IMG/VR virus record: IMGVR_UViG_3300020202_000001
Span: 160,419 to 224,418 of that record
Length of the DNA: 64,000 nt
Strand: one strand, 5' to 3'
Below the pieces are notes generated by a model. It searched no databases. It saw only the letters and a list, made by a program, of their open reading frames with translations, and had not been told where the DNA came from. The translations under genes were made by a program, and so were the position numbers. Positions 18,803 through 57,104 of the stretch are shown here, piece by piece (positions within the stretch are counted from its first letter, which is position 1; the number at the start of each line of letters is the position of its first letter).

Positions 18803-18829
18803 CCCACGCGTTCGGACACCCGACACATC

Positions 18830-39484: not shown

Positions 39485-39697
39485 ATGATCGAGAAGAACG
39501 GCGCTATCACGGACGAGACGCCCGAGGAGATCACGCCCGTCAAGGGCACGCCCGGCGGCCGGTTCTACGGCTCGCCCAGCGGGTGTGCCAAGCCCAACTG
39601 CTGCCGCACGAAGGCCGCGAACGACGCCAACAGCTCGCGGACCGACCACGCCGCCACCCGGGCGGCCGACGCGGTGGCCAACGCCGCCCGCAAGTGA
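39485..39697 (+). CDS. small hypothetical protein
   Basis: RBS ggagg, 70 aa. Confidence 0.65.
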   Translation: MIEKNGAITDETPEEITPVKGTPGGRFYGSPSGCAKPNCCRTKAANDANSSRTDHAATRAADAVANAARK

Positions 39698-39753
39698 CTG
39701 AGTAGGACCGGCACGGACTCGCCGGTCACCGCACTCGTTCAAGGACGAACACG

Positions 39754-41682: not shown

Positions 41683-41688
41683 TTCGAT

Positions 41689-41716
41689 TTGATACGGGCT
41701 CGGCCGAGGGTATGAT
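41689..41716 (+). promoter_or_regulatory. sigma70-type promoter for the glycosyltransferase cluster
   Basis: TTGATA-16 bp-TATGAT. Confidence 0.6.
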
Positions 41717-41791
41717 TGCCCGCCGATCCAGGGCCAATTCAAGGAAGAGGTCACGCCGCGTCCGCCGCTGGCCGGTGTGCCGTCTGCACCG

Positions 41792-42598: not shown

Positions 42599-42599
42599 G

Positions 42600-43301: not shown

Positions 43302-43311
43302 GGTGAACCAC

Positions 43312-44382: not shown

Positions 44383-44410
44383 CTCGCTATTGTCACCCTT
44401 TTGTGGGATA

Positions 44411-44434
44411 GTTTTCAAAACCGGTTTTTAGAAG
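44411..44434. promoter_or_regulatory. palindrome copy upstream of the tubulin gene
   Basis: gttttc-aaaa-ccgg-tttt-tagaag followed by RBS aaggag. Confidence 0.8.
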
Positions 44435-44450
44435 AAGGAGCTTCGCACCG

Positions 44451-45722
44451 ATGTCCAACGACGCAGAACAACGCATGGCCGCCAGCACCGACGCCGCCGC
44501 CCGCAAGCCCGCCGCCGTGGCCGTCTCGGCCCCGCGGCCCCGCCCCGGGATCGCGAACGTGGCCGCCCAGGTCGCCAACGCAAACCGCTCGACCGCCACC
44601 AAGCCCCAGAAGATCGAGGACGCGTTCGACCACGAGGTCGCGTTCCGCTTCGCCTTCCTCGGTGCCGGGCAGGGCGGCGGCCGGATCGCCAACGCGTTCT
44701 ACGAGCTGGGCTACCGCCGGGTGGGCGTGTTCAACACGACCGACTCCGACTTCAACGGGCTGAACGAGGACATCGTCAAGCTGAACCTGAAGACGGGCGG
44801 GTCGGCCAAGGACACCGAGCTGGCCCGCCGCTCGCTCTCGGGCCGGGAAGAGGAGGTCCGCGACCTCCTGACCAAGGCGTGGGGCCAGGACGTCGACGTC
44901 GCCATGATCTCGGCCAGCCTCGGCGGCGGCACGGGCAGCGGCACGGCCCCCGAGCTGGTGAAGATCGCCCGCCAGTACCTCAAGGACCAGGGCAAGCCCG
45001 CCCGCGTCGGCGCGATCGTCAGCCTGCCCAACCGGGCCGAGGGCTTCCAGGTCTGCCGCAACGCCGTGAACGGGTTCAAGGCCCTGCAGGAGATGGGGGT
45101 CAGCCCGCTGATCGTCATCGACAACGCCCGGGTCGAACAGGTCTACCAGCCGTCGTTCACGAAGGTGTTCGCCACGGCCAACCAGACGGCCAGCACCTAC
45201 CTGCACCTGTTCAACCAGCTCGCCGCCGTCCACTCCGAGTTCATCACGTTCGACAAGAGCGAGTTCGCCCAGCTGCTCGACAGCGGGCTCGTCGTGATGG
45301 GCACGAGCGACATCCAGCAGATCGACAGCCCGGCCGACATCAGCTCGGCCATCCGCGACCAGATCGCCGGCAGCGTGCTCGCCCAGGTCGACCTGACCAC
45401 GGGCAACACGGCCGCCTGCCTGTTCGTCGGGTCGCAGGACGTGCTCGACCGCTTCACCACGGCGTACTTCGACGCCGGGTTCACCCAGCTCAACCGTACG
45501 CTCGCCACGAACAAGCCCGAGGGCACGCGGACCGTCGTGCACCGGGGCGTGTACCTCGGGGCCGACCCGGGGCTGCAGGCGTACGTCATGGTCGGCGGGC
45601 TCGCCCTGCCGTTCGCGTTGCTCGCCGATCTGGCCAAGGAGGGCGGTATCCCCGCCGGCGGGGGCGGCAACAGCCGTCTCGCCTCGTACCTGGGAGTGGA
45701 AGACGCACAGGCCCCGAAGTAG
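44451..45722 (+). CDS. tubulin/FtsZ-family GTPase (TubZ/PhuZ/CetZ-like)
   Basis: FLGAGQGGGRIA, signature SLGGGTGSG, VIDN, T7-like FDKSEF. Confidence 0.88.
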   Translation: MSNDAEQRMAASTDAAARKPAAVAVSAPRPRPGIANVAAQVANANRSTATKPQKIEDAFDHEVAFRFAFLGAGQGGGRIANAFYELGYRRVGVFNTTDSDFNGLNEDIVKLNLKTGGSAKDTELARRSLSGREEEVRDLLTKAWGQDVDVAMISASLGGGTGSGTAPELVKIARQYLKDQGKPARVGAIVSLPNRAEGFQVCRNAVNGFKALQEMGVSPLIVIDNARVEQVYQPSFTKVFATANQTASTYLHLFNQLAAVHSEFITFDKSEFAQLLDSGLVVMGTSDIQQIDSPADISSAIRDQIAGSVLAQVDLTTGNTAACLFVGSQDVLDRFTTAYFDAGFTQLNRTLATNKPEGTRTVVHRGVYLGADPGLQAYVMVGGLALPFALLADLAKEGGIPAGGGGNSRLASYLGVEDAQAPK

Positions 45723-45784
45723 GGTTTCCCGGTCGCGCCTAACATCCCGGGCCGTCTGACGTGTCATGGTCATGGAGGACCGAG

Positions 45785-46132
45785 ATGCGACTGCTGCTCG
45801 TGGAGGATACGCCGTGCATCGGTAGGGCGTTCCAACGCCTACTCCAGTCTCTCGGCCACGAGGTCGAGTGGGCGCAGACGTTCTCGGCCGGCGTGGCGCT
45901 GTGCAGGGAGTGCGAGTACGACCTCGTGCTCACGGACATCGGGTTGCCGGACGGCGACGGCATGGACCTGATCCCCACCGTGGGGCGGGTCCGTGCCGTC
46001 GTCATTTCCGCCTACTCCGACCCCGAGCGCATCGCGGCGGCCCGAGCCCTCGGCTACCTCGACTACATCGTGAAGCCGTGCGACTTCGACATGCTCAAAG
46101 CGGTCGTCGAGCGGTGTGCCCTCGCCTCTTGA
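45785..46132 (+). CDS. single-domain response regulator (receiver)
   Basis: LLLVED, LVLTDIGLPDGDG (phosphoacceptor Asp), SA, YIVKP. Confidence 0.9.
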   Translation: MRLLLVEDTPCIGRAFQRLLQSLGHEVEWAQTFSAGVALCRECEYDLVLTDIGLPDGDGMDLIPTVGRVRAVVISAYSDPERIAAARALGYLDYIVKPCDFDMLKAVVERCALAS

Positions 46133-46165: not shown

Positions 46166-46561
46166 ATGCCACCTCCGAACAAACCCATCCCGACCCTGAT
46201 GCAGCACCTGCGTCGGGCGTACGGCGAGCGTGTGCTGGAGCTTCGCAAGGCCTCCGACGCGTCTCGCTCCCCGGCCCCGGAAGGGACCAAGCACGCCTCG
46301 GCCTACCCGGACACGCCCGAGGGCAAGGCGTACCAGGCCGCGATCAGCCTCGACGGGTTCGTCGGCTTCTGCGAGGACTACCTCAACGAGCACCGCGTCA
46401 CGGCCCCGTGGTACGCCGACGACGGGCTCGGGCTCATCTTCGCCGACAACACCCGGGTCACGATCAACGTGCAGGGCGAGAACGCCAACAGCGGGCAGAT
46501 GCAGCCCAGCGGGGCGGTCGACGTGATGGAAGGCAAGGGGTTCGGCTCCCACCCGATCTGA
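46166..46561 (+). CDS. hypothetical protein
   Basis: 131 aa, RBS ggag; contains KHAS motif. Confidence 0.7.
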   Translation: MPPPNKPIPTLMQHLRRAYGERVLELRKASDASRSPAPEGTKHASAYPDTPEGKAYQAAISLDGFVGFCEDYLNEHRVTAPWYADDGLGLIFADNTRVTINVQGENANSGQMQPSGAVDVMEGKGFGSHPI

Positions 46562-46565
46562 CGCC

Positions 46566-46880
46566 ATGGTCGACTCCACCGACACCGACGTGGTCTACTT
46601 CGCCAGCATGTACGGCGGCGGGGACCTCATCCGCGTCGACGCCTGCACGCTGGAGAAGTTCGAGGCGTTCGCTCGCCGCAAGTACGGCACGCCCGAGGAT
46701 CACAAGGACTGGTTCTCGAAGCTGTTCGTCGACGAGCGGCCCATGCAGATGCTGGAGCTGCTCAAGGCCGGCAAGCCGGTCGAGGCGTGGGAGAGCAAGC
46801 AGGGCTGGATCGCCGCCGCACGGTCGAGGATCGAGGCCGTCCGGCAGCTGATCGGCGTGATGGAGCGGCTGAAACTATGA
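46566..46880 (+). CDS. hypothetical protein
   Basis: 104 aa, high GC3. Confidence 0.7.
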   Translation: MVDSTDTDVVYFASMYGGGDLIRVDACTLEKFEAFARRKYGTPEDHKDWFSKLFVDERPMQMLELLKAGKPVEAWESKQGWIAAARSRIEAVRQLIGVMERLKL

Positions 46881-47596
46881 AGAACCACGGATACTTCAAG
46901 ACGCCCGAGCACGGCCTCCAGCTGGAGGAGACGATCACGGCCAACGACGCCGAGGGCGTGCGTCACCTGTTCCGCTACTGGTGGGCGTTCGACGTCGGCC
47001 GGCTGATGAACACGGCCCGCGTCCACGACCTCGGGTGCGGCGGCGGGTACGGCTCCCGCATCCTGCTGGAAATCCCCGAGGTCAAGCGGGTCGTCGGCGT
47101 GGACCTGCAGCCCGCCGCCCTGAACATGGCCCGGGGCGACTACGCCGATCCGCGGCTGGCGTGGGCCGAGTTCCACCTGGAGAACCACTGGGAGGACCAC
47201 AAGGAGACGGCGGAGCCGGCCGACCTGATCGCCGCCTTCGAGGTCTTCGAGATGCTCAAGCACCGGGAGTTCTTCCTGGAGCAGGCGGCGGCCAAGCTCG
47301 CCAACGACGGCGTCCTGCTGCTGTCGGCGAACTTCGTCGGCCGGCAGAAGTGCCACTCGGCCCCGACCGACGCGTACTTCCATTACAACCGCCCGGTCCT
47401 CGAACGGCTGCTGAAGCGGTACTTCGGCGTCGTGAAGTTCGCCCAGGACTCCAAGCCCGAGGACGGCGACGTCCTGTTCAAGCTGAAGCACCACTACGAC
47501 GCGGTCGTCCGCAAGGCGGCCGTGAACACCACGAAGAAGTTCGAGCCCTACCCCGTGGGCGACAACGCGATCTTCTGTGCCCAGCCGCTGCGGTAA
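46877..47596 (+). CDS. class I SAM-dependent methyltransferase
   Basis: VHDLGCGGGYG, VVGVD, AAFEVFEML. Confidence 0.85.
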   Translation: MKNHGYFKTPEHGLQLEETITANDAEGVRHLFRYWWAFDVGRLMNTARVHDLGCGGGYGSRILLEIPEVKRVVGVDLQPAALNMARGDYADPRLAWAEFHLENHWEDHKETAEPADLIAAFEVFEMLKHREFFLEQAAAKLANDGVLLLSANFVGRQKCHSAPTDAYFHYNRPVLERLLKRYFGVVKFAQDSKPEDGDVLFKLKHHYDAVVRKAAVNTTKKFEPYPVGDNAIFCAQPLR

Positions 47597-47648
47597 GGTC
47601 CGCACGCGGCACGTTCCCCTGACCCGTAAAGAAGAGAAGGAGCCCACC

Positions 47649-48506
47649 ATGGGCGGTAGCAACCACGCCTCCGAGCCCGAGCAGAAGCCCGAGCCCGTCG
47701 AGTCGAAGCAGATGGGCAAGATCCCTCGGCCCGACATCCGCGACGAGCACCTGAAGGCGATCGGCGGCCTGTTCTTCGACAACTTCTGCGCCGAGCACAA
47801 CGTGCCCGACCAGATGCGGCCGAGCGTCGACCCCAAGCCGTTCATGAACTGGCTGCCGACGCAGGTGGCGAAGTACACGTACGAGACCCTGCAGGCGGCG
47901 CTGGAGCCGGTGAAGATCACGCCCGACTCCGCCCGGTTCATGCTGGAGCTGCCGTTCAAGGGCTACGGGCCGAACCACATCATCGCCCTGTGGCCGTTCC
48001 TGACGCTCAAGGACCGCCCCCGCAGGCACCAGGTCCACAGCGTGAACATGATGGTGGCGATCCAGTTCGTCGACGGCACGGTCGTGCCGATCAACATGCT
48101 GGCCCACAAGGACGTCAGCAGCGAGCCGCTCGACGACGCCCACGTCGTGCACCTGGTCATCACCCGCACGCCGGACATCGCCACCCAGATCAGCCTCGCC
48201 GGCCTCGACGTGCTGCACGACAAGCACGCCCCCAAGATGCAGGGCTTCGTCTCGCCGAAGATCGTGGGCCTGGTCAGGCAGCTGATCGCCAAGGCACCCA
48301 CGGCCGCGGGGCACAGCGGCGAGGGCGTCGTGGACGTCGCCGACCCGACCGCGATCCGCCTCACCGACGAGGACCGGCACAAGGCCAACATGCTGATCTC
48401 GTTCGTCGAGCAGCTCTTCCCGGGCGAGATCCCGGACAACGTGAAGGCCAAGATCACCGGCCAGCACCTGAAGCAGGAGACGCCGGGCGGGTTCGACGAG
48501 GGTTGA
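47649..48506 (+). CDS. hypothetical protein
   Basis: RBS aaggag, high GC3. Confidence 0.75.
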   Translation: MGGSNHASEPEQKPEPVESKQMGKIPRPDIRDEHLKAIGGLFFDNFCAEHNVPDQMRPSVDPKPFMNWLPTQVAKYTYETLQAALEPVKITPDSARFMLELPFKGYGPNHIIALWPFLTLKDRPRRHQVHSVNMMVAIQFVDGTVVPINMLAHKDVSSEPLDDAHVVHLVITRTPDIATQISLAGLDVLHDKHAPKMQGFVSPKIVGLVRQLIAKAPTAAGHSGEGVVDVADPTAIRLTDEDRHKANMLISFVEQLFPGEIPDNVKAKITGQHLKQETPGGFDEG

Positions 48507-48656
48507 GCCCCCGAAACGAGTTGCACGCCTCCGTGCGATGTGAGGAAGCGGGCCGTCCCGGTCGGGGCGGCTCGTCTTCGTTGACGCTAAACGTGCGGGC
48601 GGCGATGATGGGTTCTGTCAAGGATGACAACGCCCCCGAAGTCAAAGGAGTGACAG

Positions 48657-49256
48657 ATGCCCGCCAAGAGTAAGAGCCAGCAGCGGTTCTTCGGTATGGT
48701 CCACGCCGCGCAGAAGGGCGGGAAGGGGACCAAGAACCCCGCCGTCGCCTCCGCCGCCAAGAAGATGAGCCCCGACAGCGTCGGGCACTTCGCCAAGACG
48801 AAGCACAAGGGCCTGCCGGACAAGAAGGCCGCCGCCAAGTTCGCCGCCGACGCCGCCACCGTGCTCGCCGTCGAGGAGCCCGCGTTCTCGAAGGTGGCCG
48901 CGGACGTGCTCCGCTCCCACGACCTCCACTGGGCGATCTTCAACGCCTTCCCCACCCGGACCAAGCAGGCCCGGGAGCGGATCTTCTCCGTCATCGTCAA
49001 GGCCGCCTCCGCCCTCCAGAAGCGGGCGAACGGCATGGGCATGGGCGGGGCCGCCCCGATGCCGGCCGGTGCCGACGCCGGCGGGGCGGGCGGGGACATG
49101 ATGGGCATGGGGGCCGCCCTCGGCGGCATGGGCGCTGCCCCGGGCGGGATGGCCAGCGCCGGCAGCGGCATGGGCTCGCCGCCCGCCCAGAACGTCCCGA
49201 CCACGAGCCCGATGAGCTTCAACGGCAGCCCCACCCAGGGCTTCGCAGGCTTCTAA
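48657..49256 (+). CDS. phage protein with DUF3008-like N-terminus, probable virion-associated
   Basis: MPAKSKSQQRFFGMVHA...FAKTKHKGLP; K-x-A motifs; G/M-rich tail. Confidence 0.6.
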   Translation: MPAKSKSQQRFFGMVHAAQKGGKGTKNPAVASAAKKMSPDSVGHFAKTKHKGLPDKKAAAKFAADAATVLAVEEPAFSKVAADVLRSHDLHWAIFNAFPTRTKQARERIFSVIVKAASALQKRANGMGMGGAAPMPAGADAGGAGGDMMGMGAALGGMGAAPGGMASAGSGMGSPPAQNVPTTSPMSFNGSPTQGFAGF

Positions 49257-49344
49257 CCACCTCGTCGTGATCTGTCCGAGACGGCTTTACCTTAGGACCG
49301 GCGGGCGGGGCCTGGTAATCCCGCCCGCCGCCTGAGGTGACCGC

Positions 49345-49368
49345 GATCTCAAAACCGGTTTTTGGATC
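49345..49368. promoter_or_regulatory. 24-bp palindrome copy
   Basis: gatctc-aaaa-ccgg-tttt-tggatc. Confidence 0.85.
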
Positions 49369-49391
49369 TCCTCAAGGAAGAGGGTATTCGC

Positions 49392-50429
49392 ATGCAACAC
49401 AACGCCCGCATGGACGCGAACAAGCTGTACGTCGTCACCGCGATCTCGAACCCGGTGAGGTACGCCAGCCGCTACAAGCTGTACTTCGAGTTCGAGAAGC
49501 GGATGCGGGACGCCGGCGTCACGCTCATCACGGTCGAGGTGCAGCTGGGCGACCGCCCGTTCTGCGTCACCGAGCGTGACAACGTGAACCACGTCCAGCT
49601 CCGCACCTGGTCCGAGATCTGGCACAAGGAGAACGCCCTCAACATCGGCGTGCAGCACCTGTCGCAGATCCACCCGGACTGGGAGTACGTCGGCTGGTTC
49701 GACGCGGACATCAGCTTCGCCAACCCGGCCTGGGCCACGGAGACGATCCAGGCCCTCCAGCACCACATGCTCGTGCAGCCGTGGTCGCACACGCTCGACC
49801 TGAAGCCGGACTTCGCCCCGTGCGAGTGGTTCTACAAGACGGGGAAGGAGACGCTGAAGCCCGCGAGCTGGGGCTACTGCCACGTCAACGGCGTGCCGAT
49901 GGCCAACACGGACCTGGGCAAGAGCCTGGCCAACGGCGGGAAGATGGACCGCAGCTGTGACGGGTACGGCGAGCAGGGCGGCACGTACTACTGGCACCCG
50001 GGCTTCGCCTGGGCCGCGCGGCGTGAGGCGTGGGACCACCTGGGCGGGCTGATCGACTACAGCATCCTCGGGGCCGCGGACTACATCATGGGGGCGGCGC
50101 TCACGGGGAAGGGAGAGGTCGGCCTCGCCTCGTGGATGCACCCGAACTACGTCCGGTGGATCAAGCAGTGGAAGGACCGGGCCGACAAGTACATCCAGGG
50201 CGACGTCGGGTACGTGCCCGGCCTGCTCCTGCACTACTGGCACGGGAAGAAGGCCCAGCGGGGCTACAAGGACCGGTGGCGGATCTTCCACGACCACGGC
50301 TTCGACCCCGAGCTGGACCTGAAGCGTGACAGCCAGGGCCTGTACCAGCTGACCGACCGCAGCCCCGGCCTCCGCGACGGGTGCCGGGCGTACTTCCGCC
50401 AGCGGAACGAGGACAGCGTCGACTGCTAG
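49392..50429 (+). CDS. GT-A fold glycosyltransferase-like protein
   Basis: WHKENALNIG, WFDADI (DxD), HPGFAWA, HYWHG. Confidence 0.65.
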   Translation: MQHNARMDANKLYVVTAISNPVRYASRYKLYFEFEKRMRDAGVTLITVEVQLGDRPFCVTERDNVNHVQLRTWSEIWHKENALNIGVQHLSQIHPDWEYVGWFDADISFANPAWATETIQALQHHMLVQPWSHTLDLKPDFAPCEWFYKTGKETLKPASWGYCHVNGVPMANTDLGKSLANGGKMDRSCDGYGEQGGTYYWHPGFAWAARREAWDHLGGLIDYSILGAADYIMGAALTGKGEVGLASWMHPNYVRWIKQWKDRADKYIQGDVGYVPGLLLHYWHGKKAQRGYKDRWRIFHDHGFDPELDLKRDSQGLYQLTDRSPGLRDGCRAYFRQRNEDSVDC

Positions 50430-50514
50430 GGGCGACCGTCCCCGCAAACGACCCTCGGCGGTTTTCAGACCCCGTTAGACCAGTAGCATCACCAGCACAG
50501 AGGAGACCAGACAG

Positions 50515-53500
50515 ATGAGCATGATCCCCGGACAGCAGATGGGCGGACCGATGGGTAGCCCCGGCATGGGCATGGCCCCGAGCATGAGCGGCAGCATGGC
50601 GTTCCCCCGCAGCCTGTTCGGTGGCATGGGGCGAGGCATGAAGGCACCGCCCAACCCGGCCGCACACCCCCAGGCACCCCAGAGCCAGCCCGCCACCGCA
50701 GACGTGGTCGGGCAGATGGCACAGCAGGCCCACCAGCAGAACGCCCAGGCCAAGATCGCCGGTTTCGAGGCGCGCCGTAACGAGCCCGGTCTGCAGCAGC
50801 CCAGCAGCGTCGACCCGGTGAAGACGGCCTACGAGCAGTATCAGGCCCAGCTAGGCCAGAGCCAGAGCACGGGGAGCACCGTTGCCCAGGCCCAAACCGG
50901 GGTGGACGGCCTCCCCAAGGGCCAGAAGACGGCGGCGGCTGCCGTAACTGCTGCTGCCTCGACGGCGGCGGCGGATTTCCACGGCAATCCGTCCACATGG
51001 GCCGCCCTTCGAGCCCTGCCACTAACGAACAAGCGCGCCAGCGCCGTGCCGCCCCCCGCCCAGGCCCTCCCCGCCGACCCGGGCATGGGGCCGATGAGCA
51101 CGGCCATCTCCGCACCGCCCGCAGCACCGGCAGCGGCGGCTCCGGCACCCGTTGGAGGGACGCCCCCAGCGCAGCCGGACCCCGCCATGGGCGGACAGGC
51201 GGGCGGGATGGCCCAGGCTCCGGCCCCTGCCCCGGCGGCGGGCGGGATGGCGGCACCGGCACCGGCACCGGGCATGCCGCCCGTCCCCGGTCAGGCACCG
51301 GCCCAGATGCCCCCGGGCACGATGCAGCAGGACGCCGGCGTGCAGCAGTCCATGGGGGAACTCTTTCAGGAAGCGAACGCTCCCGACTCCGCAGGTGACG
51401 ACATGAAGTTCCAGAACATCGTGCAGGCCTCCGACCACTGGGGGCTCGAACGCTTCGCGAAGACCGCCGCGCCGGGCGACCTGTTCGACGTCGAGGGCGA
51501 CCTCGCCGCGATGGACGCCGAGCAGCAGCCCGCCGTGAAGCAGAAGCCCGCCCTCCCGCCCGTGGCCGCCAAGCCGCCCGCGACGCGTCCGGCGGCCCCC
51601 GCCACGCAGCCCGCAGGAGCCCCGCAGGGCGTTCGACCCCCTCAGGGCACACCCCAGGCCCCGAAAATCGCTCCTGGGCCGTCTGGTAGCCTCCCCGGGG
51701 CATCCCGGCCGCCCGTCCAGCCGCGTCCCGTGCCGGTTCAGCCCGGTGCGGGGCGGGCTCAGCCGCTGCCGACCGCCCCGCCGGCCGCCAAGCCCGTGCC
51801 CGTGCGTCCGCCCGCCACCCGTCCGGCCCCGGTCGCCCCCGGCTCGGGGATGATTAACGGGAAGCCGGCGAGCCAGGTGCTCAAGGGCATCCCGAAGCAG
51901 GGCTCGACCGTGCAGGACGACGCGGCCGAGGCGGCCCTCCGCACGTTCGTGTTCGGCAAGCAGGCGTGGCAGGACAACGGCGTGAAGGACCGCACCTCGG
52001 CGAGCGGCGAGAGCACGAACGTCGGGTTCGCCCACCGCAACGACGACTACGACCGCGGCCCGGCCGCGTGGGAGAACAGCGCGAAGTACCTGAAGCACGG
52101 GGCCAAGGGCGGCGACCGCCGCATCCCGTCGAGCAGCACCACGAAGCTCGCCAAGGCCCGCCAGGGCGAGACGACGTTCGGGCAGGACAGCAAGCCGGGC
52201 GACAAGCTCGCCCAGCTCGTGAAGAAGATCCTGTCCAAGCGGGGCGTGAAGCCCGCCCCGGGGACCAAGCAGGCGGCCAACCTCGCCAACGAGGCCAAGC
52301 GGCAGGGCATCTACCAGGGGGCGACGCAGGCCCCGGCACCGGCCCCCGCCGGCCGCCCCGCCGCCGCGACCAAGCTCCCGCCGATGGTGACGGGTGCCGC
52401 CCCGGCCATGCCGAAGGCGGCCGGGTACGGCGCGTTGGCCGGTGTCGGGGCCGCCCTCGGCGGCCTGCTCGGCGGCGGGGCGTACGTGGCTGCGAACCCG
52501 ACCGCCCCCTCGCGGCTGGCGGCGATGGGCACGGACTCCACCGCCTTCCCCGGGGCGGTCAACAGCGTCGGCGGCGGGGCGTTGCTCGGCGGGGCCGGCG
52601 GTGCCCTCGTCGAATACCTCCGCCGCCGCAAGGCCGAGGCGGAACAGCCGGCGACGCTCCCGGGCACGGCCAAGGCGGCCGCCGCGGTCGCCGCCAAGAA
52701 GCCGTTCCCCGCCACGGCCGGGCTCCTGCAGACGGAGAACGACCTGCGGGAGGACGAGGAGGCCGAGAAGGTGGCCCTGACCGTCGAGGACGGCGGGCTG
52801 CCGAGCCGCGCCCTGGCGAACACGGTCGGGCACGTCGGCAACACGCTCGGGCTGGCCGGGCCGATCATGTCCCTGCGGTCGTACGTGAACCCGCAGGGCA
52901 CGCCGCAGCGGCGGCAGAAGCACGAGGAGTCGGCCGGGCTGCTGGAGGCGGCCGAGCCGGACGCCCTCTCGGGCACGAAGCTCCGCCTCGGCGGGTCGGA
53001 CCTGGTCGACGACCTCCTGTGGAAGCGGGAGGAGCCCGGGCAGGACCTCCCGTGGACGCAGCAGATCGGCGGGCGGAACTTCCAGAACCCCCGCACCGGG
53101 CCGCTCGGCAAGGCGCTGGGACTGATCTCGACCCCGCTGGCCGCCCTGCAGGGCAACCTGCTGCGTGCGCCGCACTACAACCCCGAGACCGACGTCGCCA
53201 CGAACTACTGGGACGAGCGGGGCGTGACCGAGCACGAGCTGGGCCACGCGATCGACTTCAACACCGTGTCGAGCGAGAAGGGCAAGGGCAAGGTCAGCGA
53301 CTCGTGGCTCGGCCGCCAGGGCCGCGGGACGGTGCGGGACCTGTACCGCCTCGCCTACGGCATCCCGGGCGTCAACCTGTGGCACGAGGCCCAGGCGAAC
53401 CGCAAGAGCTGGAAGGCCCTCGAATCGCAGCTCGGCAAGGGGAGCGACAAGCTCCTGGAGCACGAGTACGACCGGGCGAAGGTCCTGCCGGCCGGGTACG

Positions 53501-54159
53501 GCTCGTACATCGGCAACACGCTGTCCCCGCTCCTCGGCCCGGCCGGGGCGATCGGCGGCATGGTCGGCGGCAAGGTGGTCGGCACCGCCCGCCGCGACGC
53601 GATCGAGAGCGAGCAGCGAGCCCGGGCCGCCGAGAAGCGCCGGGGGTGGAGCGAGCGTGACGGCGACAACGACGGGCACGTCAACGACGGCCGCCCGGAC
53701 GAGCGGGACTACCGCAAGGCCGCCGGCTTCCTCGACAACGTCAAGAACACGGACTGGAAGGCCGCCCTCCCGGGCGTCGCCGGCCGGGCCGGGGTCGGGG
53801 CGGCGCTGGGCGGCGGCGTGGCCGGGATCGCCCACCTGATGAAGGGCGACGAGGAGAAGAAGCGGAAGGGCAACGGTGCCCTGGCCACGGTCGGCAAGGG
53901 AGCCCTGCTCGGCGGCGGGATCGGGACGGGCATCGGCCTGTCCCGCGAGGTGGTCGGCCCGGCCCTGAAGAAGGGGTCGGCCGTCGACCGGCTCGTCAAG
54001 CGTGCCGCCCTCCGCGCGTTCGTGAAGAAGGCGGCCGTCACGCCGGGCCTGGCCCAGCGGCTGCGGAAGATGAAGGCGGAGAAGACCGTCCGCCAGTACC
54101 AGCCCGCCACGGACTCGATCCGCAGCGGGGACAGCGACAACGACGTGAAGGCGGCCTGA
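50515..54159 (+). CDS. large modular low-complexity protein (putative virion polyprotein) with HExxH metallopeptidase module
   Basis: 1214 aa; P/A/G/Q-rich; recurrent K-x-A motifs; TEHELGH plus downstream LWHEAQAN; glycine-zipper segments. Confidence 0.8.
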   Translation: MSMIPGQQMGGPMGSPGMGMAPSMSGSMAFPRSLFGGMGRGMKAPPNPAAHPQAPQSQPATADVVGQMAQQAHQQNAQAKIAGFEARRNEPGLQQPSSVDPVKTAYEQYQAQLGQSQSTGSTVAQAQTGVDGLPKGQKTAAAAVTAAASTAAADFHGNPSTWAALRALPLTNKRASAVPPPAQALPADPGMGPMSTAISAPPAAPAAAAPAPVGGTPPAQPDPAMGGQAGGMAQAPAPAPAAGGMAAPAPAPGMPPVPGQAPAQMPPGTMQQDAGVQQSMGELFQEANAPDSAGDDMKFQNIVQASDHWGLERFAKTAAPGDLFDVEGDLAAMDAEQQPAVKQKPALPPVAAKPPATRPAAPATQPAGAPQGVRPPQGTPQAPKIAPGPSGSLPGASRPPVQPRPVPVQPGAGRAQPLPTAPPAAKPVPVRPPATRPAPVAPGSGMINGKPASQVLKGIPKQGSTVQDDAAEAALRTFVFGKQAWQDNGVKDRTSASGESTNVGFAHRNDDYDRGPAAWENSAKYLKHGAKGGDRRIPSSSTTKLAKARQGETTFGQDSKPGDKLAQLVKKILSKRGVKPAPGTKQAANLANEAKRQGIYQGATQAPAPAPAGRPAAATKLPPMVTGAAPAMPKAAGYGALAGVGAALGGLLGGGAYVAANPTAPSRLAAMGTDSTAFPGAVNSVGGGALLGGAGGALVEYLRRRKAEAEQPATLPGTAKAAAAVAAKKPFPATAGLLQTENDLREDEEAEKVALTVEDGGLPSRALANTVGHVGNTLGLAGPIMSLRSYVNPQGTPQRRQKHEESAGLLEAAEPDALSGTKLRLGGSDLVDDLLWKREEPGQDLPWTQQIGGRNFQNPRTGPLGKALGLISTPLAALQGNLLRAPHYNPETDVATNYWDERGVTEHELGHAIDFNTVSSEKGKGKVSDSWLGRQGRGTVRDLYRLAYGIPGVNLWHEAQANRKSWKALESQLGKGSDKLLEHEYDRAKVLPAGYGSYIGNTLSPLLGPAGAIGGMVGGKVVGTARRDAIESEQRARAAEKRRGWSERDGDNDGHVNDGRPDERDYRKAAGFLDNVKNTDWKAALPGVAGRAGVGAALGGGVAGIAHLMKGDEEKKRKGNGALATVGKGALLGGGIGTGIGLSREVVGPALKKGSAVDRLVKRAALRAFVKKAAVTPGLAQRLRKMKAEKTVRQYQPATDSIRSGDSDNDVKAA

Positions 54160-54181
54160 TCTCAAAACCGGTTTTGGGATC
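54158..54181. promoter_or_regulatory. 24-bp palindrome copy
   Basis: gatctc-aaaa-ccgg-tttt-gggatc. Confidence 0.85.
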
Positions 54182-54216
54182 GCTCGCCGCCCGGGGCTCG
54201 GACAAGGAGGTCCACC

Positions 54217-54792
54217 GTGCGTAGGCGAACAGCCCTTAGCGTTGCAGCGTTCATCCTCGCCCTCCTGACCGGGTGCATCGCCCGGCAGGAGGCGAGGATG
54301 CACGACCCCGAGCCGATCCGGCTTGAGGTCACGCTGCCGGTCCCGAAGCCGCAGGCCCCCCGGCCGTCGTACGCCGCGAGCACGCAGCCCACGACCAGGC
54401 CCGGCCCGCCCGTCTGGTCGAAGCACACGCAGTGGGTGACCCTGAACGGGGACATCAGCGGCGGCGAGCAGATGTGGGCCGACGAGTTCCGCTACCACCT
54501 GACCGAGGCCCCGATCGTCCTCGTCTGCCACGGGGACACGGTCACGCACAAGGGCCAGTGGTGGCTGATCCCCGACGTCGGCCCCTCGATCAGGGCGGAC
54601 GGCGAGGACGGGGCGATCGCCAGGCTGCAGCGGAAGTACCCGGGGCAGCCGGTCGTCCTGATCTCGTGCAACGAGGCGGGCATGGAGCTGCGGATGCCCG
54701 GCGTCTGGTACGCCCGCCAGAAGGTCTGGAGCCGCCCCACCACCAAGCCCGAGCACGCAAAGCGGTGGAGCGACTTTGAGGTCGGCCGCTGA
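54217..54792 (+). CDS. lipoprotein with caspase-fold-like His/Cys motifs
   Basis: signal peptide ending LLTGC (lipobox); IVLVCHG and VVLISCN. Confidence 0.6.
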   Translation: MRRRTALSVAAFILALLTGCIARQEARMHDPEPIRLEVTLPVPKPQAPRPSYAASTQPTTRPGPPVWSKHTQWVTLNGDISGGEQMWADEFRYHLTEAPIVLVCHGDTVTHKGQWWLIPDVGPSIRADGEDGAIARLQRKYPGQPVVLISCNEAGMELRMPGVWYARQKVWSRPTTKPEHAKRWSDFEVGR

Positions 54793-54851
54793 CCGGGTAC
54801 GATGAACGGGTGCCACGGACGGCACGGGACGCTAGGCAAGGACGCCCACGC

Positions 54852-57104
54852 ATGACCCTCGACTTCAGCACGCTCGCCAGGGAAGCCGCCGTCAGCCTGA
54901 CCAAGCAGGCCAAGGGTCCGGGCTTCGGCATGGCCGCCGTCAGCGCCGCCACGACCGCCGACGAGCCCCGCCGCCGCCGTGCCCCCGCGATCGAGCCCGA
55001 CCCGATCGTCGCCCCCGACGACGTCCGCCGCCTCGGCGAGGTGCTCACCCCGCCCCGCCGCCGCCCCCGCCCCCGCCAGACGATCCGCCGCCGGCCCGCC
55101 GCCCCGGTGAAGGCCGCCGGGCTGGTCAACCTCCCGCAGTTCGACCTGGACATCAGCCAGCCGACCATCGACGCCGCGATCGACGCGAGCTACCCCCGCA
55201 CCACGCTGACCGACAAGGGGCTGTGGGAGTCGCTCAAGGGCATGTTCCGCGGCCCCGACGAAGAGGAGGACGACAAGCAGGCCCTGGACCTCCGCTGGCT
55301 GGCCAAGCAGGCGGCCGGCGGCGGTGCCGTGGCGGACGACGTGGCCCGCGTCGCCGGCCCGGTCGCCCAGAAGGTCGCCCCCAAGGCCACGCAGGCCCTG
55401 ACGGCCGCCGCCGCCAAGGCCGCCCCCGCCGTCGCCCAGCCCGTGGCCGGTGCGGCCGGCGGTGCGATGAAGCTCAACCTGGGCGGGCTCGCCGACGAGG
55501 CGGCCGGCGCTGCCAACGCCGTGCGTCCCCCGACGCCCGGCGGCACGTTCTCCCTGCCCGCGGGCGGCCCCAAGCCCGTCACGCCCCCGCCGGCGGCCCC
55601 CGCGGCCCCTGCCGTCGCCCCTGCGGCCCAGCAGGCGGCACAGGCGGCCACCACGGGCATGCGGGGCCAGACCGCCCTGAACATGGCCGCCCGCACGCCC
55701 GGTGCCGTGGGCTCCGGCGCGTCCGCCTACTTCGACCCCAACTGGGACCGGAACAACGTCGGGTACGCCGACCCCCGCCGGCTCGCGACGGCGGCCGGTG
55801 CGACGGCGGCCGGGTACACCGGAGCGGGCCAGCGGATGGCGGTCGGGCACTCGGTCGGGTTCGGCGGCGACATGGTCCGCGGGATGGCCGGTGCCGAGGG
55901 CGACGCGGGCCTGCGGTACTTCGGTGCCATGGCGGGCCTCGGGACGAACGCCCCGGGCCTCCGCCAGCGGACCGGCAACATGTTCGCCCCCGGCACGGTG
56001 GGCGGGACGCTCGGCCCCAAGGCCCTGATGGCCGGCGGGATGGCCGCGACCGGCGTGGGCGGCGTGCAGCTCGCCCGGGACGTCGTCGGGCGGGAGATCA
56101 CGACCCGGGCCACGCAGGAGACGGACAAGGCGTTCCGCCAGGCCGGGATCGGCGACGCGGCCCGCCAGCGGTTCGCCCAGATCACGGACGCCGAGAACGC
56201 GATCTTCCACGGGGCGAACGACGGGTACGCGAAGCTCAAGCAGCTCCGCCCCGACCTGTACGAGGCGAGCATCGACCCGCAGACCGGCCAGTTCAACCCC
56301 GAGCTGGCCGCCAACGCCCTCCGCACGGAGAAGCTGGGCGTCGGGATGCAGAACTACGGCGTCCCGATCAACCCCCAGCAGGCGGCGGGGCTGATGGACA
56401 CGGTCAGCCAGTTCCGGGAGAACCCCTCGGCCCTGATCGACCACGCGGTCAAGAGCGTCACGCCCGAGCAGAAGACGCAGTGGCTCGCCCAGCTCGTGCG
56501 GGGCACGCCCGTCGAGGGCCTGCTCGGCGGGGCCGGCGGCGGGCTGCTCGGGCTCCTGAGCGGCGGGGGCGGCGCTGCGGCGGGGATCATGGGCGTGCTC
56601 GACGGCGTCGCCAACAAGATGCTCGGGCTCTTCGGCATGGACGGCTCGAAGATGAGCGGCGTGCAGAAGGTCCTGGTCATGCTGGGCGGGATCGGCGTGG
56701 TCGCCGGCGGCGTGTCGGCCCTGCTGGGCGGCAAGGGCCTCGGGGCCGGGCTGGCCGTCGTCGGCGGGCTCGGGATGGCCGCCGGGCTGTTCGGGGACAA
56801 GCTGGGCATCGGCAAGGAACAACCGGCGGCCGGCGGCGGGGGCGGCGACGCCAACCCGACCGCCGCCGCCCCCAAGCAACAGCAGGGCGACCAGGGCTTC
56901 GAGTCCGCCCTGCAGTCCGAGGTCGTCAGCCTGCTGCAGGGCAACGGCCTGCCCCCGGACGCGTTCACGAGCCAGGACCCGGCCGTGAAGCAGCTGCTGG
57001 AGGTGAAGATGCAGGACCCGCAGTTCCGCCAGCAGCTCGAACAGCTGCAGCAGGCGGGCGAGGCGGGCGTTCTACCGCCGCGGGAGACGGGGAACATGAT
57101 GTGA
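54852..57104 (+). CDS. large Ala/Gly-rich protein with hydrophobic segments (putative virion/ejection protein)
   Basis: 750 aa; K-x-A motifs in the N-terminal third; glycine-rich TM-like stretches near the C-terminus. Confidence 0.8.
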   Translation: MTLDFSTLAREAAVSLTKQAKGPGFGMAAVSAATTADEPRRRRAPAIEPDPIVAPDDVRRLGEVLTPPRRRPRPRQTIRRRPAAPVKAAGLVNLPQFDLDISQPTIDAAIDASYPRTTLTDKGLWESLKGMFRGPDEEEDDKQALDLRWLAKQAAGGGAVADDVARVAGPVAQKVAPKATQALTAAAAKAAPAVAQPVAGAAGGAMKLNLGGLADEAAGAANAVRPPTPGGTFSLPAGGPKPVTPPPAAPAAPAVAPAAQQAAQAATTGMRGQTALNMAARTPGAVGSGASAYFDPNWDRNNVGYADPRRLATAAGATAAGYTGAGQRMAVGHSVGFGGDMVRGMAGAEGDAGLRYFGAMAGLGTNAPGLRQRTGNMFAPGTVGGTLGPKALMAGGMAATGVGGVQLARDVVGREITTRATQETDKAFRQAGIGDAARQRFAQITDAENAIFHGANDGYAKLKQLRPDLYEASIDPQTGQFNPELAANALRTEKLGVGMQNYGVPINPQQAAGLMDTVSQFRENPSALIDHAVKSVTPEQKTQWLAQLVRGTPVEGLLGGAGGGLLGLLSGGGGAAAGIMGVLDGVANKMLGLFGMDGSKMSGVQKVLVMLGGIGVVAGGVSALLGGKGLGAGLAVVGGLGMAAGLFGDKLGIGKEQPAAGGGGGDANPTAAAPKQQQGDQGFESALQSEVVSLLQGNGLPPDAFTSQDPAVKQLLEVKMQDPQFRQQLEQLQQAGEAGVLPPRETGNMM

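What the first reader, a model, noticed from the sequence alone, without database searches (positions are those of the whole stretch)
46166..57104. K-x-A motif punctuates large proteins: putative protease-processed virion polyproteins
Seen: K-x-A(A/S/G) or KAA recurs at apparent module boundaries: KIAG, KTAY, KTAA, KRAS, KTAA, KQAW, KQAA, KAAG, KVAL, KAAG, KRAA, KKAA in the 50515 ORF; KQAK, KAAG, KQAA in the 54852 ORF; KFAA, KVAA, KAAS, KRAN in the 48657 ORF; KHAS in the 46166 ORF. The segments between motifs differ sharply in composition. Established: T4 and phiKZ prohead proteases cut many head proteins at short motifs. Inference: these ORFs are polyproteins cut into many small internal or ejected peptides. 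Caveat: Ala and Lys are common here.
Basis: partly seen in the sequence, partly recalled or inferred. Interest (0 to 1): 0.62.

Follow-up and report, generated by a model that had tools for sequence, protein, structure and literature searches.

The report
Predicted capsid-protease cut motif K-x-A
In this uncultivated 224-kb jumbo phage, the short motif Lys-x-Ala is very probably the cutting signal of the phage's own capsid-maturation protease, but its stronghold is the head-gene cluster outside the window, and of the four flagged genes only the 1214-residue one (and weakly the 199-residue one) carries a real signal.

Summary
Enrichment is real only in the 50515 ORF: 23 sites against 11.6 expected, at spacing +2 only. 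It is marginal in the 48657 ORF and absent in the 54810/54852 and 46166 ORFs. The sites do not coincide with composition boundaries.

The idea behind the finding gains strong support outside the window.
- Genome 41361-42854 encodes a prohead protease with the T4 gp21/herpesvirus assemblin fold (Z 11.1). It carries 16 K-x-A sites, most of them conserved in 68 homologues.
- Neighbouring head-module proteins carry 2-3.5 times the expected number. This holds in 80 related metagenomic phages with 43-66% GC.
- All 72 full-length major-capsid orthologues have K-x-A-x-D near the N-terminus and almost no K-x-A elsewhere.
- The rest of the proteome is not enriched.

In the 50515-ORF family, K-x-A is enriched in the variable flanks (2.3x and 1.6x) and depleted in the conserved HExxH domain (0.44x). 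Conserved sites bracket that domain.

Best reading: K-x-A is the protease's motif (P3 Lys, P1 Ala by analogy), and the 1214-residue protein is a probable processed, head-packaged protein. "Polyproteins cut into many peptides" is not shown for the other three ORFs. No cleavage has been measured.

The parts
50515..54159 (+). 1214-aa protein, a probable substrate of the prohead protease. It has a variable low-complexity N-terminal part, a conserved HExxH domain and a Gly-zipper-rich C-terminal part. It carries 23 K-x-A sites.
   Evidence: K-x-A is 23 against 11.6 expected, at spacing +2 only. About 20 homologues lie on contigs of up to 230 kb. Pfam, PHROG and NCBIfam give no match.
50515..52767 (+). 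N-terminal variable region (residues 1-751). It is rich in Met/Gly, Gln and Pro/Ala, has one hydrophobic Gly-zipper-like segment (residues 635-660, window 52417-52494), and holds 15 K-x-A sites (16 when the bracketing site at 752 is counted).
   Evidence: This region cannot be aligned between homologues. Pooled over 20 family members, the N-terminal flanks hold 68 K-x-A against 29.1 expected.
52768..52776 (+). K752-V-A754, a conserved K-x-A just before the first strand of the folded domain. It is the proposed N-terminal maturation cut.
   Evidence: K-x-A is present at this column in 15 of 19 aligned homologues. In four homologues it lies at residues 9-14 of the protein, behind a short leader. 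The same holds in IMG/VR relatives. It sits where the model passes from pLDDT below 50 to high confidence.
52777..53715 (+). Conserved domain of about 313 residues with an invariant HELGH (window 53233-53247) and an invariant Glu 47 residues downstream. It is a zincin-like putative metallopeptidase of an undescribed family and contains no K-x-A.
   Evidence: The AF2 model has pLDDT 89.6 and pTM 0.86. PDB and BFVD matches to zinc metallopeptidases are only weak. ESM Atlas has look-alike clusters at TM 0.62-0.64 with no name, and Zn_peptidase_2 and M4 at TM about 0.35. Across the family the domain holds 16 K-x-A against 36.3 expected.
53716..53724 (+). K1068-A-A1070, a conserved K-A-A just after the domain. 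It is the proposed C-terminal cut.
   Evidence: K-x-A is present in 13 of 20 homologues at this column, after a charged linker. It lies in a low-confidence tail of the model.
53725..54156 (+). C-terminal region with two Gly-zipper-like segments and 6 further K-x-A sites, one of them formed by the last three residues.
   Evidence: Pooled over the family, the C-terminal flanks hold 103 K-x-A against 65.8 expected.
54217..54792 (+). 191-aa predicted lipoprotein (signal peptide ending in a Cys lipobox) lying between the two large ORFs. It has no K-x-A.
   Evidence: Sequence read. No family match.
54810..57104 (+). 764-aa protein whose start is probably the ATG at 54852. It has several Gly-zipper/hydrophobic segments in the C-terminal third. 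It has 6 K-x-A sites, all within the first 205 residues, and no overall enrichment.
   Evidence: 6 against 4.9 expected. Only two representative homologues exist. Both begin with a short leader carrying K-E-A at residues 8-12, where this protein has R-E-A. Over the three proteins the N-parts hold 13 against 7.8 and the C-parts 3 against 8.1.
48657..49256 (+). 199-aa protein. It has an N-terminal DUF3008 module (residues 1-57, window 48657-48827), then a cluster of 7 K-x-A (residues 56-124) that includes K-F-A-A-D (48837-48851) and K-V-A-A-D (48891-48905), then a Met/Gly-rich tail.
   Evidence: Pfam DUF3008 and five PHROGs match residues 1-60 only. K-x-A is 7 against 3.4 and K-x-A-x-D is 2 against 0.12. 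Only the DUF3008 module is conserved elsewhere.
46166..46561 (+). 131-aa protein with a single K-H-A (46289-46297). There is no evidence that it belongs to the system.
   Evidence: 1 against 0.5 expected. No relatives in viral contigs. No family match.

Best explanation
The window is the last 64 kb of a complete 224,418-bp jumbo-phage genome with terminal repeats.

The phage encodes a prohead (capsid-maturation) serine protease of the T4 gp21/herpesvirus assemblin fold at genome 41361-42854, outside the window. Lys-x-Ala is most probably this protease's recognition motif. By analogy with every characterised protease of this fold, Lys would be P3 and Ala P1, with the cut after Ala. Ala/Ser/Glu is preferred at P1' and Asp at P2'.

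Proposed substrates in the head module:
- the protease itself, at an invariant K-A-A in the disordered linker between the protease domain and a C-terminal helical domain;
- scaffold-like and internal-protein-like neighbours, each carrying many sites;
- the major capsid protein, which would lose a leader of about 33 residues.

Within the window, the 1214-aa protein is a probable further substrate encoded away from the head module. Cuts at K752-V-A and K1068-A-A would free a zincin-like HExxH domain, which carries no motif, from variable motif-rich flanks that would be shredded. This resembles the leaders of T4 internal proteins and the propeptides of SPN3US and phiKZ ejection proteins. The 199-aa DUF3008 protein is a weak candidate, the 764-aa protein a very weak one, and the 131-aa protein none.

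What is shown: the motif statistics, their conservation, the protease fold and the capsid-protein identity. What is inferred: that the motif is cleaved, which residue is P1, and that the window proteins enter the head.
For: 1. Motif specificity. In the 1214-aa protein only spacing +2 is enriched (23 against 11.6). Genome-wide, the top-scoring proteins are 38191-39783 (18 against 5.2), 41361-42854 (16 against 5.2), 42826-44223 (15 against 4.4), 44308-44766 (8 against 2.1), 33852-36458 (13 against 5.7) and 130168-131490 on the minus strand (14 against 3.7). Six head-module proteins pooled give 75 against 24, and Lys with Asp at +4 gives 36 against 11.6. The remaining proteome gives 274 against 290.6. 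In the motif-rich set 45% of lysines have Ala at +2, against 10% elsewhere. The DNA pattern occurs only in codon phase 0.

2. Protease. The AF2 model has pLDDT 85. VIA-align gives Z 11.1, rmsd 3.7, with 152 of 165 residues aligned to T4 gp21 (5jbl) over residues 1-231. VZV and HCMV proteases follow at Z 5.4 and 3.8. The top three Foldseek hits are 5jbl. H62, H103 and S166 are invariant.

3. Conservation. In 68 homologues, motif lysines are 84% conserved against 56% for other lysines, and motif alanines 87% against 50%, while the x position varies freely. The median is 16 sites per homologue against 4.1 expected. K247-A-A249 is 100% conserved inside the only long stretch with pLDDT below 50.

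4. Capsid protein. The 314-aa protein matches PHROG 2522 'major head protein' (E 3.5e-7) and NF042927 'HK97-fold major capsid protein' (E 4e-10). K31, A33 and D35 are invariant in 42 homologues although residues 1-30 vary. All 72 full-length orthologues have K-x-A-x-D in the first ~54 residues (K-x-A itself in the first 50), and together they have only 4 K-x-A further on.

5. Replication across the clade. In a 226-kb relative where only 49 of 167 proteins are recognisably shared, the most enriched proteins are the orthologues of this genome's most enriched ones. In 80 IMG/VR loci with 43-66% GC, orthologue groups give ratios of 3.3, 2.7, 2.5, 2.2, 3.4 and 3.1, against 0.6-0.8 for three neighbouring families. 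L/I/A/S/G-x-E pairs are not enriched.

6. The 1214-aa family. N-flanks hold 68 against 29.1, the domain 16 against 36.3 and C-flanks 103 against 65.8. Bracketing sites are conserved, and some homologues have leaders of only 9-14 residues. The domain co-occurs with the protease on the same IMG/VR contigs.

7. Precedent. SPN3US gp245 cuts after A-X-E (P3-P2-P1). It removes N-terminal propeptides of 20-254 residues, often by several cuts, and removes its own C-terminal propeptide (PMC10052503). Herpesvirus pUL26 releases its N-terminal protease domain from a C-terminal scaffold at an R-site with Ala at P1 (PMC4498786).
Against: - No cleavage has been observed. There are no proteomics data and no isolate.
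- The protease does not match the Pfam S77 or S78 models. The assignment rests on a predicted structure.
- Eight of the protease's conserved K-x-A sites lie inside its folded domain, where conservation could be structural.
- The 1214-aa protein's sites lack the Asp at +4 seen in the head set (0 K-x-A-x-D). A crude, overfitted weight matrix from head-set sites did not score them above background.
- Its nominal p of 0.002 would not survive correction over 187 proteins.
- Two complete or near-complete relatives lack any homologue of it.
- It lies among replication and accessory genes, not head genes.
- Homologous sequences are not independent, so the pooled p-values overstate significance.
- Gene starts come from a crude caller.
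Confidence: 0.6

Rival explanations
1. The K-x-A pattern in the four window ORFs is a chance product of Ala- and Lys-rich, low-complexity sequence and carries no function.
For: This holds for three of the four ORFs. The 764-aa ORF has 6 against 4.9, the 131-aa ORF 1 against 0.5, and the 199-aa ORF 7 against 3.4 (p 0.03-0.06). Four of the 1214-aa protein's sites are K-P-A or K-I-A-P inside Pro-rich stretches. Sites do not track composition boundaries.
Against: In the 1214-aa protein only spacing +2 is enriched, and local shuffles that preserve regional composition never reach the observed count. Unalignable flanks of 19 other family members repeat the enrichment while the domain is depleted. 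The same motif is enriched 2-3.5 times in defined protein families across 80 phages spanning 43-66% GC, and not in their neighbours.
Confidence: 0.1
2. K-x-A is a real, selected short linear motif of head proteins, but not a cleavage site. It could be a docking or capsid-targeting motif bound by the scaffold, portal or shell, or the target of a lysine-modifying or cross-linking enzyme.
For: The statistics show selection for the motif, not cutting. Many sites lie in or at the ends of predicted helices, including inside the protease fold. The motif is depleted from mature-looking domains, which a promiscuous modification signal would also explain.
Against: The two-position layout with a free middle residue matches the P3-x-P1 layout of all characterised proteases of this fold (for A-X-E; for Ala at P1). 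The most motif-rich protein is the protease itself, with an invariant site in the flexible linker after the protease domain, where herpesvirus proteases cut themselves free. A single invariant site about 30 residues into the capsid protein is the classic position of a maturation cut. No candidate modifying enzyme was found next to these genes.
Confidence: 0.2
3. The motif is the protease's cut site in head-module proteins, but the window ORFs are not substrates. They would be membrane or envelope proteins made in the infected cell (Gly-zipper segments, with a lipoprotein between them), and the excess in the 1214-aa protein has another cause.
For: The genes sit far from the head module, between tubulin, receiver-domain, methyltransferase-like and replication genes. 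Both large ORFs have hydrophobic Gly-zipper segments and flank a lipoprotein. The 1214-aa protein's sites lack Asp at +4. Close neighbours are not conserved together with it.
Against: Motif-rich proteins conserved in a distant relative are also encoded away from the head module; genome 130168-131490 (minus strand) and its orthologue have 14 and 16 sites. Head-module proteins 39758-41347 and 17918-19066 also combine N-terminal K-x-A sites with Gly-zipper segments. The flank-enriched, domain-depleted pattern with conserved bracketing sites is hard to explain without a protease.
Confidence: 0.25

Closest known systems
Phage T4 prohead protease gp21 and its substrates (scaffold gp22, gp23 leader, internal proteins with N-terminal capsid-targeting leaders)
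   Same: The protease fold matches (Z 11.1 to 5jbl). The gene order is protease, scaffold-like protein, capsid protein. The scaffold-like protein has many sites. The capsid protein has one N-terminal site. Some 1214-aa family members have short N-terminal leaders ending in the motif. The motif has two fixed positions separated by one free residue.
   Different: T4 cuts after Glu in Leu/Ile-x-Glu (my own knowledge of the literature). Here Glu-type pairs are not enriched and the fixed residues are Lys and Ala. There is no match to the Pfam S77 model. The protease carries a C-terminal helical domain of about 250 residues.
Giant-phage proteases phiKZ gp175 and SPN3US gp245 and their processed head and ejection proteins
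   Same: It is a jumbo phage with multisubunit RNA-polymerase genes and a tubulin. Many head proteins carry repeated motif copies in long propeptide-like regions. The protease itself carries sites. Substrates are scattered in the genome. Both motifs have the P3-x-P1 layout (A-X-E in SPN3US; PMC10052503).
   Different: The motif residues differ (Lys/Ala rather than Ala/Glu). No sequence similarity to any deposited phage was found. The capsid protein is small (314 aa) with a short leader, not a long propeptide. Nothing here has been verified by mass spectrometry.
Herpesvirus assemblin (pUL26 family) with release and maturation sites
   Same: An N-terminal protease domain is fused to a C-terminal helical, scaffold-like part. 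A conserved site lies in the linker between them. Ala is at the proposed P1, followed by a small residue (R-site YLQA-T and M-site VQA-S in pseudorabies virus; PMC4498786). The fold relationship is Z 5.4 to VZV protease.
   Different: Herpesviruses have Val/Leu/Tyr-type residues upstream rather than Lys, and use two sites rather than dozens. The structural match is much weaker than the match to T4 gp21.
Phage polyvalent proteins and MuF-type packaged effectors with zincin-like metallopeptidase domains
   Same: It is a large multi-module protein with an HExxH domain that may travel in the capsid. There are weak structural echoes of LPD-type domains and IrrE-like zincins.
   Different: All matches are below significance. 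No MuF or LPD family match was found. The link is an idea, not a result.

Membership tests
Prohead proteases of the T4 gp21 / herpesvirus assemblin fold (for genome 41361-42854) | The characteristic protease fold | tested here: met
   The AF2 model has pLDDT 85. VIA-align gives Z 11.1 with 152 of 165 residues aligned to 5jbl_A, followed by VZV at Z 5.4 and HCMV at Z 3.8; the unrelated rows in between and below score 4.4 or less. The top three Foldseek hits are 5jbl, with target TM 0.57-0.66.
Prohead proteases of the T4 gp21 / herpesvirus assemblin fold (for genome 41361-42854) | Conserved catalytic His and Ser | tested here: inconclusive
   H62, H103 and S166 are invariant in 68 homologues. 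S166 and H62 lie on core strands. They were not mapped residue by residue onto gp21's catalytic pair. My choice of H103 and S166 is an inference from spacing.
Prohead proteases of the T4 gp21 / herpesvirus assemblin fold (for genome 41361-42854) | Sequence membership in Pfam Peptidase_S77 or Peptidase_S78 | tested here: not met
   The genome has no match to PF03420 or PF04586 even at E 10. Pfam, PHROGs, NCBIfam and a PDB profile search all find nothing. It is a member by fold only, so a new sequence family.
Prohead proteases of the T4 gp21 / herpesvirus assemblin fold (for genome 41361-42854) | Encoded in the head module next to scaffold and major capsid genes | tested here: met
   The capsid protein lies 2.7 kb downstream, and the baseplate and tail-fibre genes follow. 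The order is conserved in relatives.
Prohead proteases of the T4 gp21 / herpesvirus assemblin fold (for genome 41361-42854) | Proteolytic activity on head proteins | not testable with these tools
   This needs enzyme assays or virion mass spectrometry.
Protease-processed head/ejection proteins (for the window ORFs) | Carries the protease's motif more often than composition predicts | tested here: inconclusive
   Met for 50515-54159 (23 against 11.6). Marginal for 48657-49256. Not met for 54810-57104 or 46166-46561.
Protease-processed head/ejection proteins (for the window ORFs) | Motif positions conserved in homologues and placed in flexible regions outside the mature domain | tested here: met
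   This applies to the 1214-aa family only. Bracketing sites are conserved in 15 of 19 and 13 of 20 homologues. Flanks show 2.3x and 1.6x, the domain 0.44x. Both sites lie at the low-confidence edges of the model.
Protease-processed head/ejection proteins (for the window ORFs) | Physically present in proheads or virions and found cleaved | not testable with these tools
   There is no isolate and no proteome. The complex prediction gave no verdict.
Zincin metallopeptidases (for residues 755-1067 of the 1214-aa protein) | HExxH plus a third metal ligand downstream | tested here: inconclusive
   H907, E908 and H911 are invariant, and so is E958, 47 residues downstream. The role of E958 as a ligand is inferred.
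Zincin metallopeptidases (for residues 755-1067 of the 1214-aa protein) | Match to a known metallopeptidase family or fold | tested here: not met
   No Pfam, PHROG or NCBIfam match. Foldseek hits to zinc metallopeptidase structures have E 0.6-1.7 and probability 0.1-0.14. Atlas gives TM about 0.35 to Zn_peptidase_2 and M4. The VIA list is dominated by a helical hairpin.

The most novel reading that the evidence does not exclude
A large uncultivated clade of jumbo phages of roughly 190-240 kb uses a gp21-fold capsid protease with a specificity not described before: Lys at P3 and Ala at P1. More than 950 protease homologues and 1,800 capsid homologues are found in metagenomes, with hints of Planctomycetota hosts. 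The specificity would bridge phage Glu-specific proteases and herpesvirus Ala-specific assemblins. Because the motif is so strongly enriched in substrates and purged from mature domains, the set of head-internal and ejected proteins could be read directly from sequence. That set would include a cargo zincin-like enzyme bracketed by cut sites, Gly-zipper membrane-active proteins, and perhaps DUF3008 as a widespread removable leader module.
Probability: 0.4. Interest if true: 0.72.

Novelty: new variant of a known kind. Interest (0 to 1): 0.6.

Why it matters
Proteolytic maturation of giant-phage heads is known from only a few cultured phages (T4, phiKZ, 201phi2-1, SPN3US), and all of them cut after Glu. 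Here a cut motif with different chemistry is inferred from sequence statistics alone for an abundant uncultivated clade. Three signatures support it: enrichment in flanks, depletion in mature domains, and invariant single sites in the capsid protein and the protease linker. These signatures could be turned into a general method for predicting protease specificity and virion cargo in metagenomic phages.

If correct, the result does two things. It nominates concrete cargo proteins, including an HExxH enzyme and Gly-zipper proteins, that the phage may inject into its host. It also offers a natural intermediate for understanding how specificity evolved in the assemblin fold shared by phages and herpesviruses.

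Tried and rejected
- Nucleotide and protein searches of deposited phage genomes with the region, the 1214-aa protein and the tubulin gave no match.
- Pfam S77 and S78 searches of the genome found nothing.
- A profile search of PDB sequences with the protease family found only a chance helical match.
- A position-weight matrix from 75 head-set sites was overfitted. It did not separate the 1214-aa protein's sites from background K-x-A sites, so I draw no conclusion from it.
- The test of K-x-A against compositional boundaries was negative.
- A search for paralogy among motif-rich proteins found none, so the shared motif is not due to gene duplication.
- Homologues of the 1214-aa protein, its C-terminal 452 residues (which include the conserved HExxH domain) and the 49362 ORF were sought in three or four related records and not found. 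A first viral-contig scan with the C-terminal part found nothing. A profile-based scan did find relatives.
- Neighbours of two homologues are not homologous to the window's neighbours.
- Complex prediction of the protease domain with the capsid-protein leader gave no verdict. It counts neither for nor against binding.
- Structure searches with the HExxH domain model in PDB, BFVD and by VIA-align gave no significant fold assignment.
- A look-up of named cluster members gave no organism names.
- A search of the 222-kb metagenome record for the protease was not possible because the record is not held.
- The tRNA-Pro call inside the 1214-aa ORF on the opposite strand is taken as spurious.
- No alternative genetic code was needed. 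No read mapping was done.

Full report
WHAT THE WINDOW IS

The window is the last 64 kb of a single 224,418-bp virus record with direct terminal repeats, rated complete. It is 68% G+C, and nearly all genes are on the + strand.

The genome encodes multisubunit RNA-polymerase beta-like proteins and baseplate and tail-fibre proteins at 54-75 kb. The window itself encodes a replication block: an SMC-type ATPase, helicases and a family A DNA polymerase with a UDG domain. It also encodes a tubulin/FtsZ-family protein and a receiver-domain protein just upstream of the flagged region.

Deposited phage genomes hold nothing similar, even at protein level. Metagenomes hold more than 950 homologues of its protease and more than 1,800 of its capsid protein, often on contigs of 190-240 kb. 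This is an uncultivated jumbo-phage clade.

THE OBSERVATION

I counted Lys-x-Ala against residue shuffles.

- 1214-aa protein (50515-54159): 23 sites against 11.6 expected. No shuffle reached 23, whether global or confined to blocks of 40 or 20 residues. Lys/Ala pairs at every other spacing from -4 to +4 were at expectation, 8-12. The excess is specific to spacing +2 and is not explained by Ala/Lys-rich patches.
- 199-aa protein: 7 against 3.4 (marginal).
- 764-aa protein: 6 against 4.9 (none).
- 131-aa protein: 1 against 0.5 (none).

The 1214-aa protein is indeed a mosaic of compositionally different stretches. However, K-x-A sites do not fall on compositional transitions more often than random positions do.

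FOLLOWING THE MOTIF THROUGH THE GENOME

I scored all 187 called proteins. The 1214-aa protein ranks only sixth. The top scorers lie outside the window, and most sit in one block:

- 38191-39783: 18 against 5.2
- 41361-42854: 16 against 5.2
- 42826-44223: 15 against 4.4
- 44308-44766: 8 against 2.1
- 33852-36458: 13 against 5.7
- 130168-131490 on the minus strand: 14 against 3.7

An unbiased scan of all residue pairs at gaps 1-4 in the block put K-x-A first (75 against 24). Lys with Asp at +4 came second (36 against 11.6). This gives a fuller motif of roughly [E/T/L/V/I]-K-x-A-[A/S/E]-[D/A/E].

The rest of the proteome is flat (274 against 290.6). In the motif-rich set 45% of all lysines are followed by Ala at +2, against 10% elsewhere and 33% in the 1214-aa protein. 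The corresponding DNA pattern occurs only in codon phase 0, so the signal is at protein level. The motif-rich proteins are not paralogues.

WHAT THE MOTIF-RICH BLOCK IS

Sequence libraries were silent on these proteins. I therefore predicted the structure of the 497-aa protein 41361-42854 from 68 homologues (pLDDT 85).

- Residues 1-231 match the T4 capsid-assembly protease gp21 with Z 11.1 (152 of 165 residues aligned). Varicella-zoster and cytomegalovirus proteases come next, and unrelated folds trail at Z 4.4 or below. The top three Foldseek hits are also gp21.
- H62, H103 and S166 are invariant.
- Residues 250-497 are helical.
- The only long low-confidence stretch, 233-249, holds K247-A-A249, which is identical in all 68 sequences.

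The architecture is an N-terminal protease, a flexible linker with a conserved site having Ala at the putative P1, and a C-terminal helical part. Herpesvirus pUL26 has the same layout and frees its protease domain at an R-site ending in Ala (PMC4498786).

The 314-aa protein 2.7 kb downstream matches 'major head protein' PHROG 2522 (E 3.5e-7) and NCBIfam 'HK97-fold major capsid protein' (E 4e-10, below the curated cut-off). An ESM Atlas lead agrees.

The block is therefore the head module. It contains the protease, a motif-rich protein directly after it (scaffold-like by position), small motif-rich proteins and the capsid protein.

CONSERVATION

In the protease family, motif lysines and alanines are conserved at 84% and 87%, against 56% and 50% for other lysines and alanines. 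The middle residue varies freely. Homologues carry a median of 16 sites against 4.1 expected.

In the capsid protein, K31, A33 and D35 are invariant in 42 homologues, although the preceding 30 residues vary.

In a complete 226-kb relative at 59% G+C, only 49 of 167 proteins are recognisably shared with this genome. Its most enriched proteins are exactly the orthologues of this genome's most enriched ones.

Across 80 IMG/VR loci spanning 43-66% G+C, orthologue groups behave consistently:

- protease 3.3x
- 38191 group 2.7x
- 33852 group 2.5x
- 42826 group 2.2x
- 44308 group 3.4x
- 46582 group 3.1x
- three interleaved families 0.6-0.8x

All 72 full-length capsid orthologues have K-x-A-x-D in the first ~54 residues (K-x-A itself in the first 50). 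Together they have only 4 K-x-A further on. Glu-type pairs such as L-x-E and A-x-E, the motifs of T4 and of phiKZ/SPN3US, are not enriched.

MECHANISM PROPOSED

All characterised proteases of this fold read a P3 and a P1 residue with a free P2. SPN3US gp245 cuts after A-X-E, removes N-terminal propeptides of 20-254 residues, often in several cuts, and trims its own C-terminus (PMC10052503). T4 cuts after L/I-x-E (my own knowledge). Herpesviruses cut after Ala.

A two-position motif at spacing +2 that has these properties is what a cut site of this protease should look like:
- it floods the protease and scaffold-like proteins;
- it marks one site near the capsid protein's N-terminus;
- it is absent from the mature capsid body.

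I therefore propose K(P3)-x-A(P1), with the cut after Ala. Removal of 33 residues would leave a capsid protein of about 281 residues, close to the mature size of HK97's (my own knowledge). Which bond is cut, and whether all sites are used, are inferences.

THE FLAGGED ORFS IN THAT LIGHT

The 1214-aa protein has about 20 homologues of 678-1778 residues. Only a block of about 310 residues is conserved. It holds an invariant HELGH and a Glu 47 residues later.

This domain folds confidently (pLDDT 89.6, pTM 0.86). It has no significant match in PDB or BFVD. ESM Atlas holds unnamed look-alike clusters, mostly binned to Planctomycetota (TM 0.62-0.64). Known zinc peptidases match only faintly. I call it a zincin-like domain of an undescribed family.

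K-x-A immediately precedes the domain in 15 of 19 homologues and follows it in 13 of 20. In several homologues the first site lies at residues 9-14, behind a short leader, much like the targeting leaders of T4 internal proteins. Both sites sit at the low-confidence margins of the model.

Pooled over the 20 family members:

- variable N-terminal flanks: 68 sites against 29.1 expected (2.3x)
- C-terminal flanks: 103 against 65.8 (1.6x)
- the domain: 16 against 36.3 (0.44x)

Five further IMG/VR members have no site in the domain. The domain occurs on the same contigs as the protease in three cases.

Flank enrichment together with domain depletion is the strongest argument that this protein is a substrate whose flanks are shredded and whose domain is spared.

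Several points count against this. Its sites lack Asp at +4. Two complete or near-complete relatives lack the gene. It lies far from the head module. On the last point, another conserved motif-rich gene (130168-131490, minus strand) is also remote from the head module.

The 764-aa protein has only two representative homologues. They start with a short leader carrying K-E-A at residues 8-12, where this protein has R-E-A, which supports the ATG at 54852 as its start. All six of its sites lie in the first 205 residues. Over the three proteins the N-parts hold 13 against 7.8 and the C-parts 3 against 8.1. This is suggestive at most.

The 199-aa protein is a DUF3008 module (residues 1-57) followed by seven sites, two of them exact K-x-A-A-D. 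Only the DUF3008 module is conserved elsewhere. One IMG/VR member of the 1214-aa family carries a DUF3008-like leader ahead of its K-x-A sites and domain.

The 131-aa protein has one site, no relatives and no family.

VERDICT

It is right in kind, and its true centre lies outside the window. It is probably right for the 1214-aa ORF and unproven or unlikely for the others.

The system is a new variant of a known kind: prohead-protease maturation with a predicted, previously undescribed specificity in an uncultivated clade.

Limits of this work:
- no experimental cleavage data;
- the protease assignment rests on a predicted structure;
- gene calls are crude (first start codon plus a third-position G+C filter);
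- pooled statistics use related sequences, although the enriched flanks cannot be aligned;
- the complex prediction gave no verdict.

Noticed in passing
window 44451-46132: A tubulin/FtsZ-family protein (Pfam Tubulin, E 2e-14) is followed directly by a stand-alone response-regulator receiver domain. The genome also has multisubunit RNA-polymerase beta-like genes (genome 21647-31573). This recalls nucleus-forming jumbo phages, but the tubulin has no tblastn match in deposited phages and no shell protein was looked for.
   Followed up: partly
window 48657-48827; L189:3851-5350: The DUF3008 module that opens the 199-aa protein occurs at the start of 369 viral-contig proteins of very different lengths. 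In one relative it precedes K-x-A sites and the HExxH domain of the 1214-aa family. It may be a removable N-terminal leader or targeting module. This was not tested.
   Followed up: partly
window 14600-16753: A 717-aa protein has a long tail of K-P-A / K-K-P-A-D repeats alternating with acidic runs. It has 17 K-x-A, nearly all of them K-P-A. This is a different, histone-H1/AlgP-like repeat, not the head-protein motif. No family match.
   Followed up: no
window 54217-54792: A predicted lipoprotein sits between the two large Gly-zipper-containing ORFs. Homologues of the 1214-aa protein are also followed by a small ORF and then a large one, but these are not detectably homologous to the window's.
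   Followed up: partly
window 50515-50700 and 49020-49253: Unusual Met/Gly-rich low-complexity stretches occur at the N-terminus of the 1214-aa protein and in the C-terminal tail of the 199-aa protein. They are unexplained.
   Followed up: no
genome 39758-41347 and 17918-19066 (outside the window): Two further proteins combine K-x-A sites clustered at the N-terminus with Gly-zipper-like hydrophobic segments, like the window's two large ORFs. They may form a class of membrane-active packaged proteins.
   Followed up: no
window 50841-50925, minus strand: ARAGORN calls a tRNA-Pro inside the 1214-aa ORF on the opposite strand. It lies in Pro/Ala-rich coding sequence and is probably a false positive.
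   Followed up: no
window 46787-47596: This ORF, probably starting at an internal Met, has a SAM-methyltransferase-like Gly-rich motif. Its two K-x-A-x-D may be chance.
   Followed up: no
homologues P0269 and Atlas clusters: One capsid homologue is labelled as coming from a Planctomycetota metagenome bin. The unnamed structural look-alikes of the HExxH domain are mostly binned to Planctomycetota. This is a hint to the host phylum, not evidence.
   Followed up: no
window 54810 vs 54852: The 764-aa ORF probably starts at the ATG at 54852, not the upstream GTG. Both homologues begin with the same short leader that aligns to residues from 54852 onward.
   Followed up: yes
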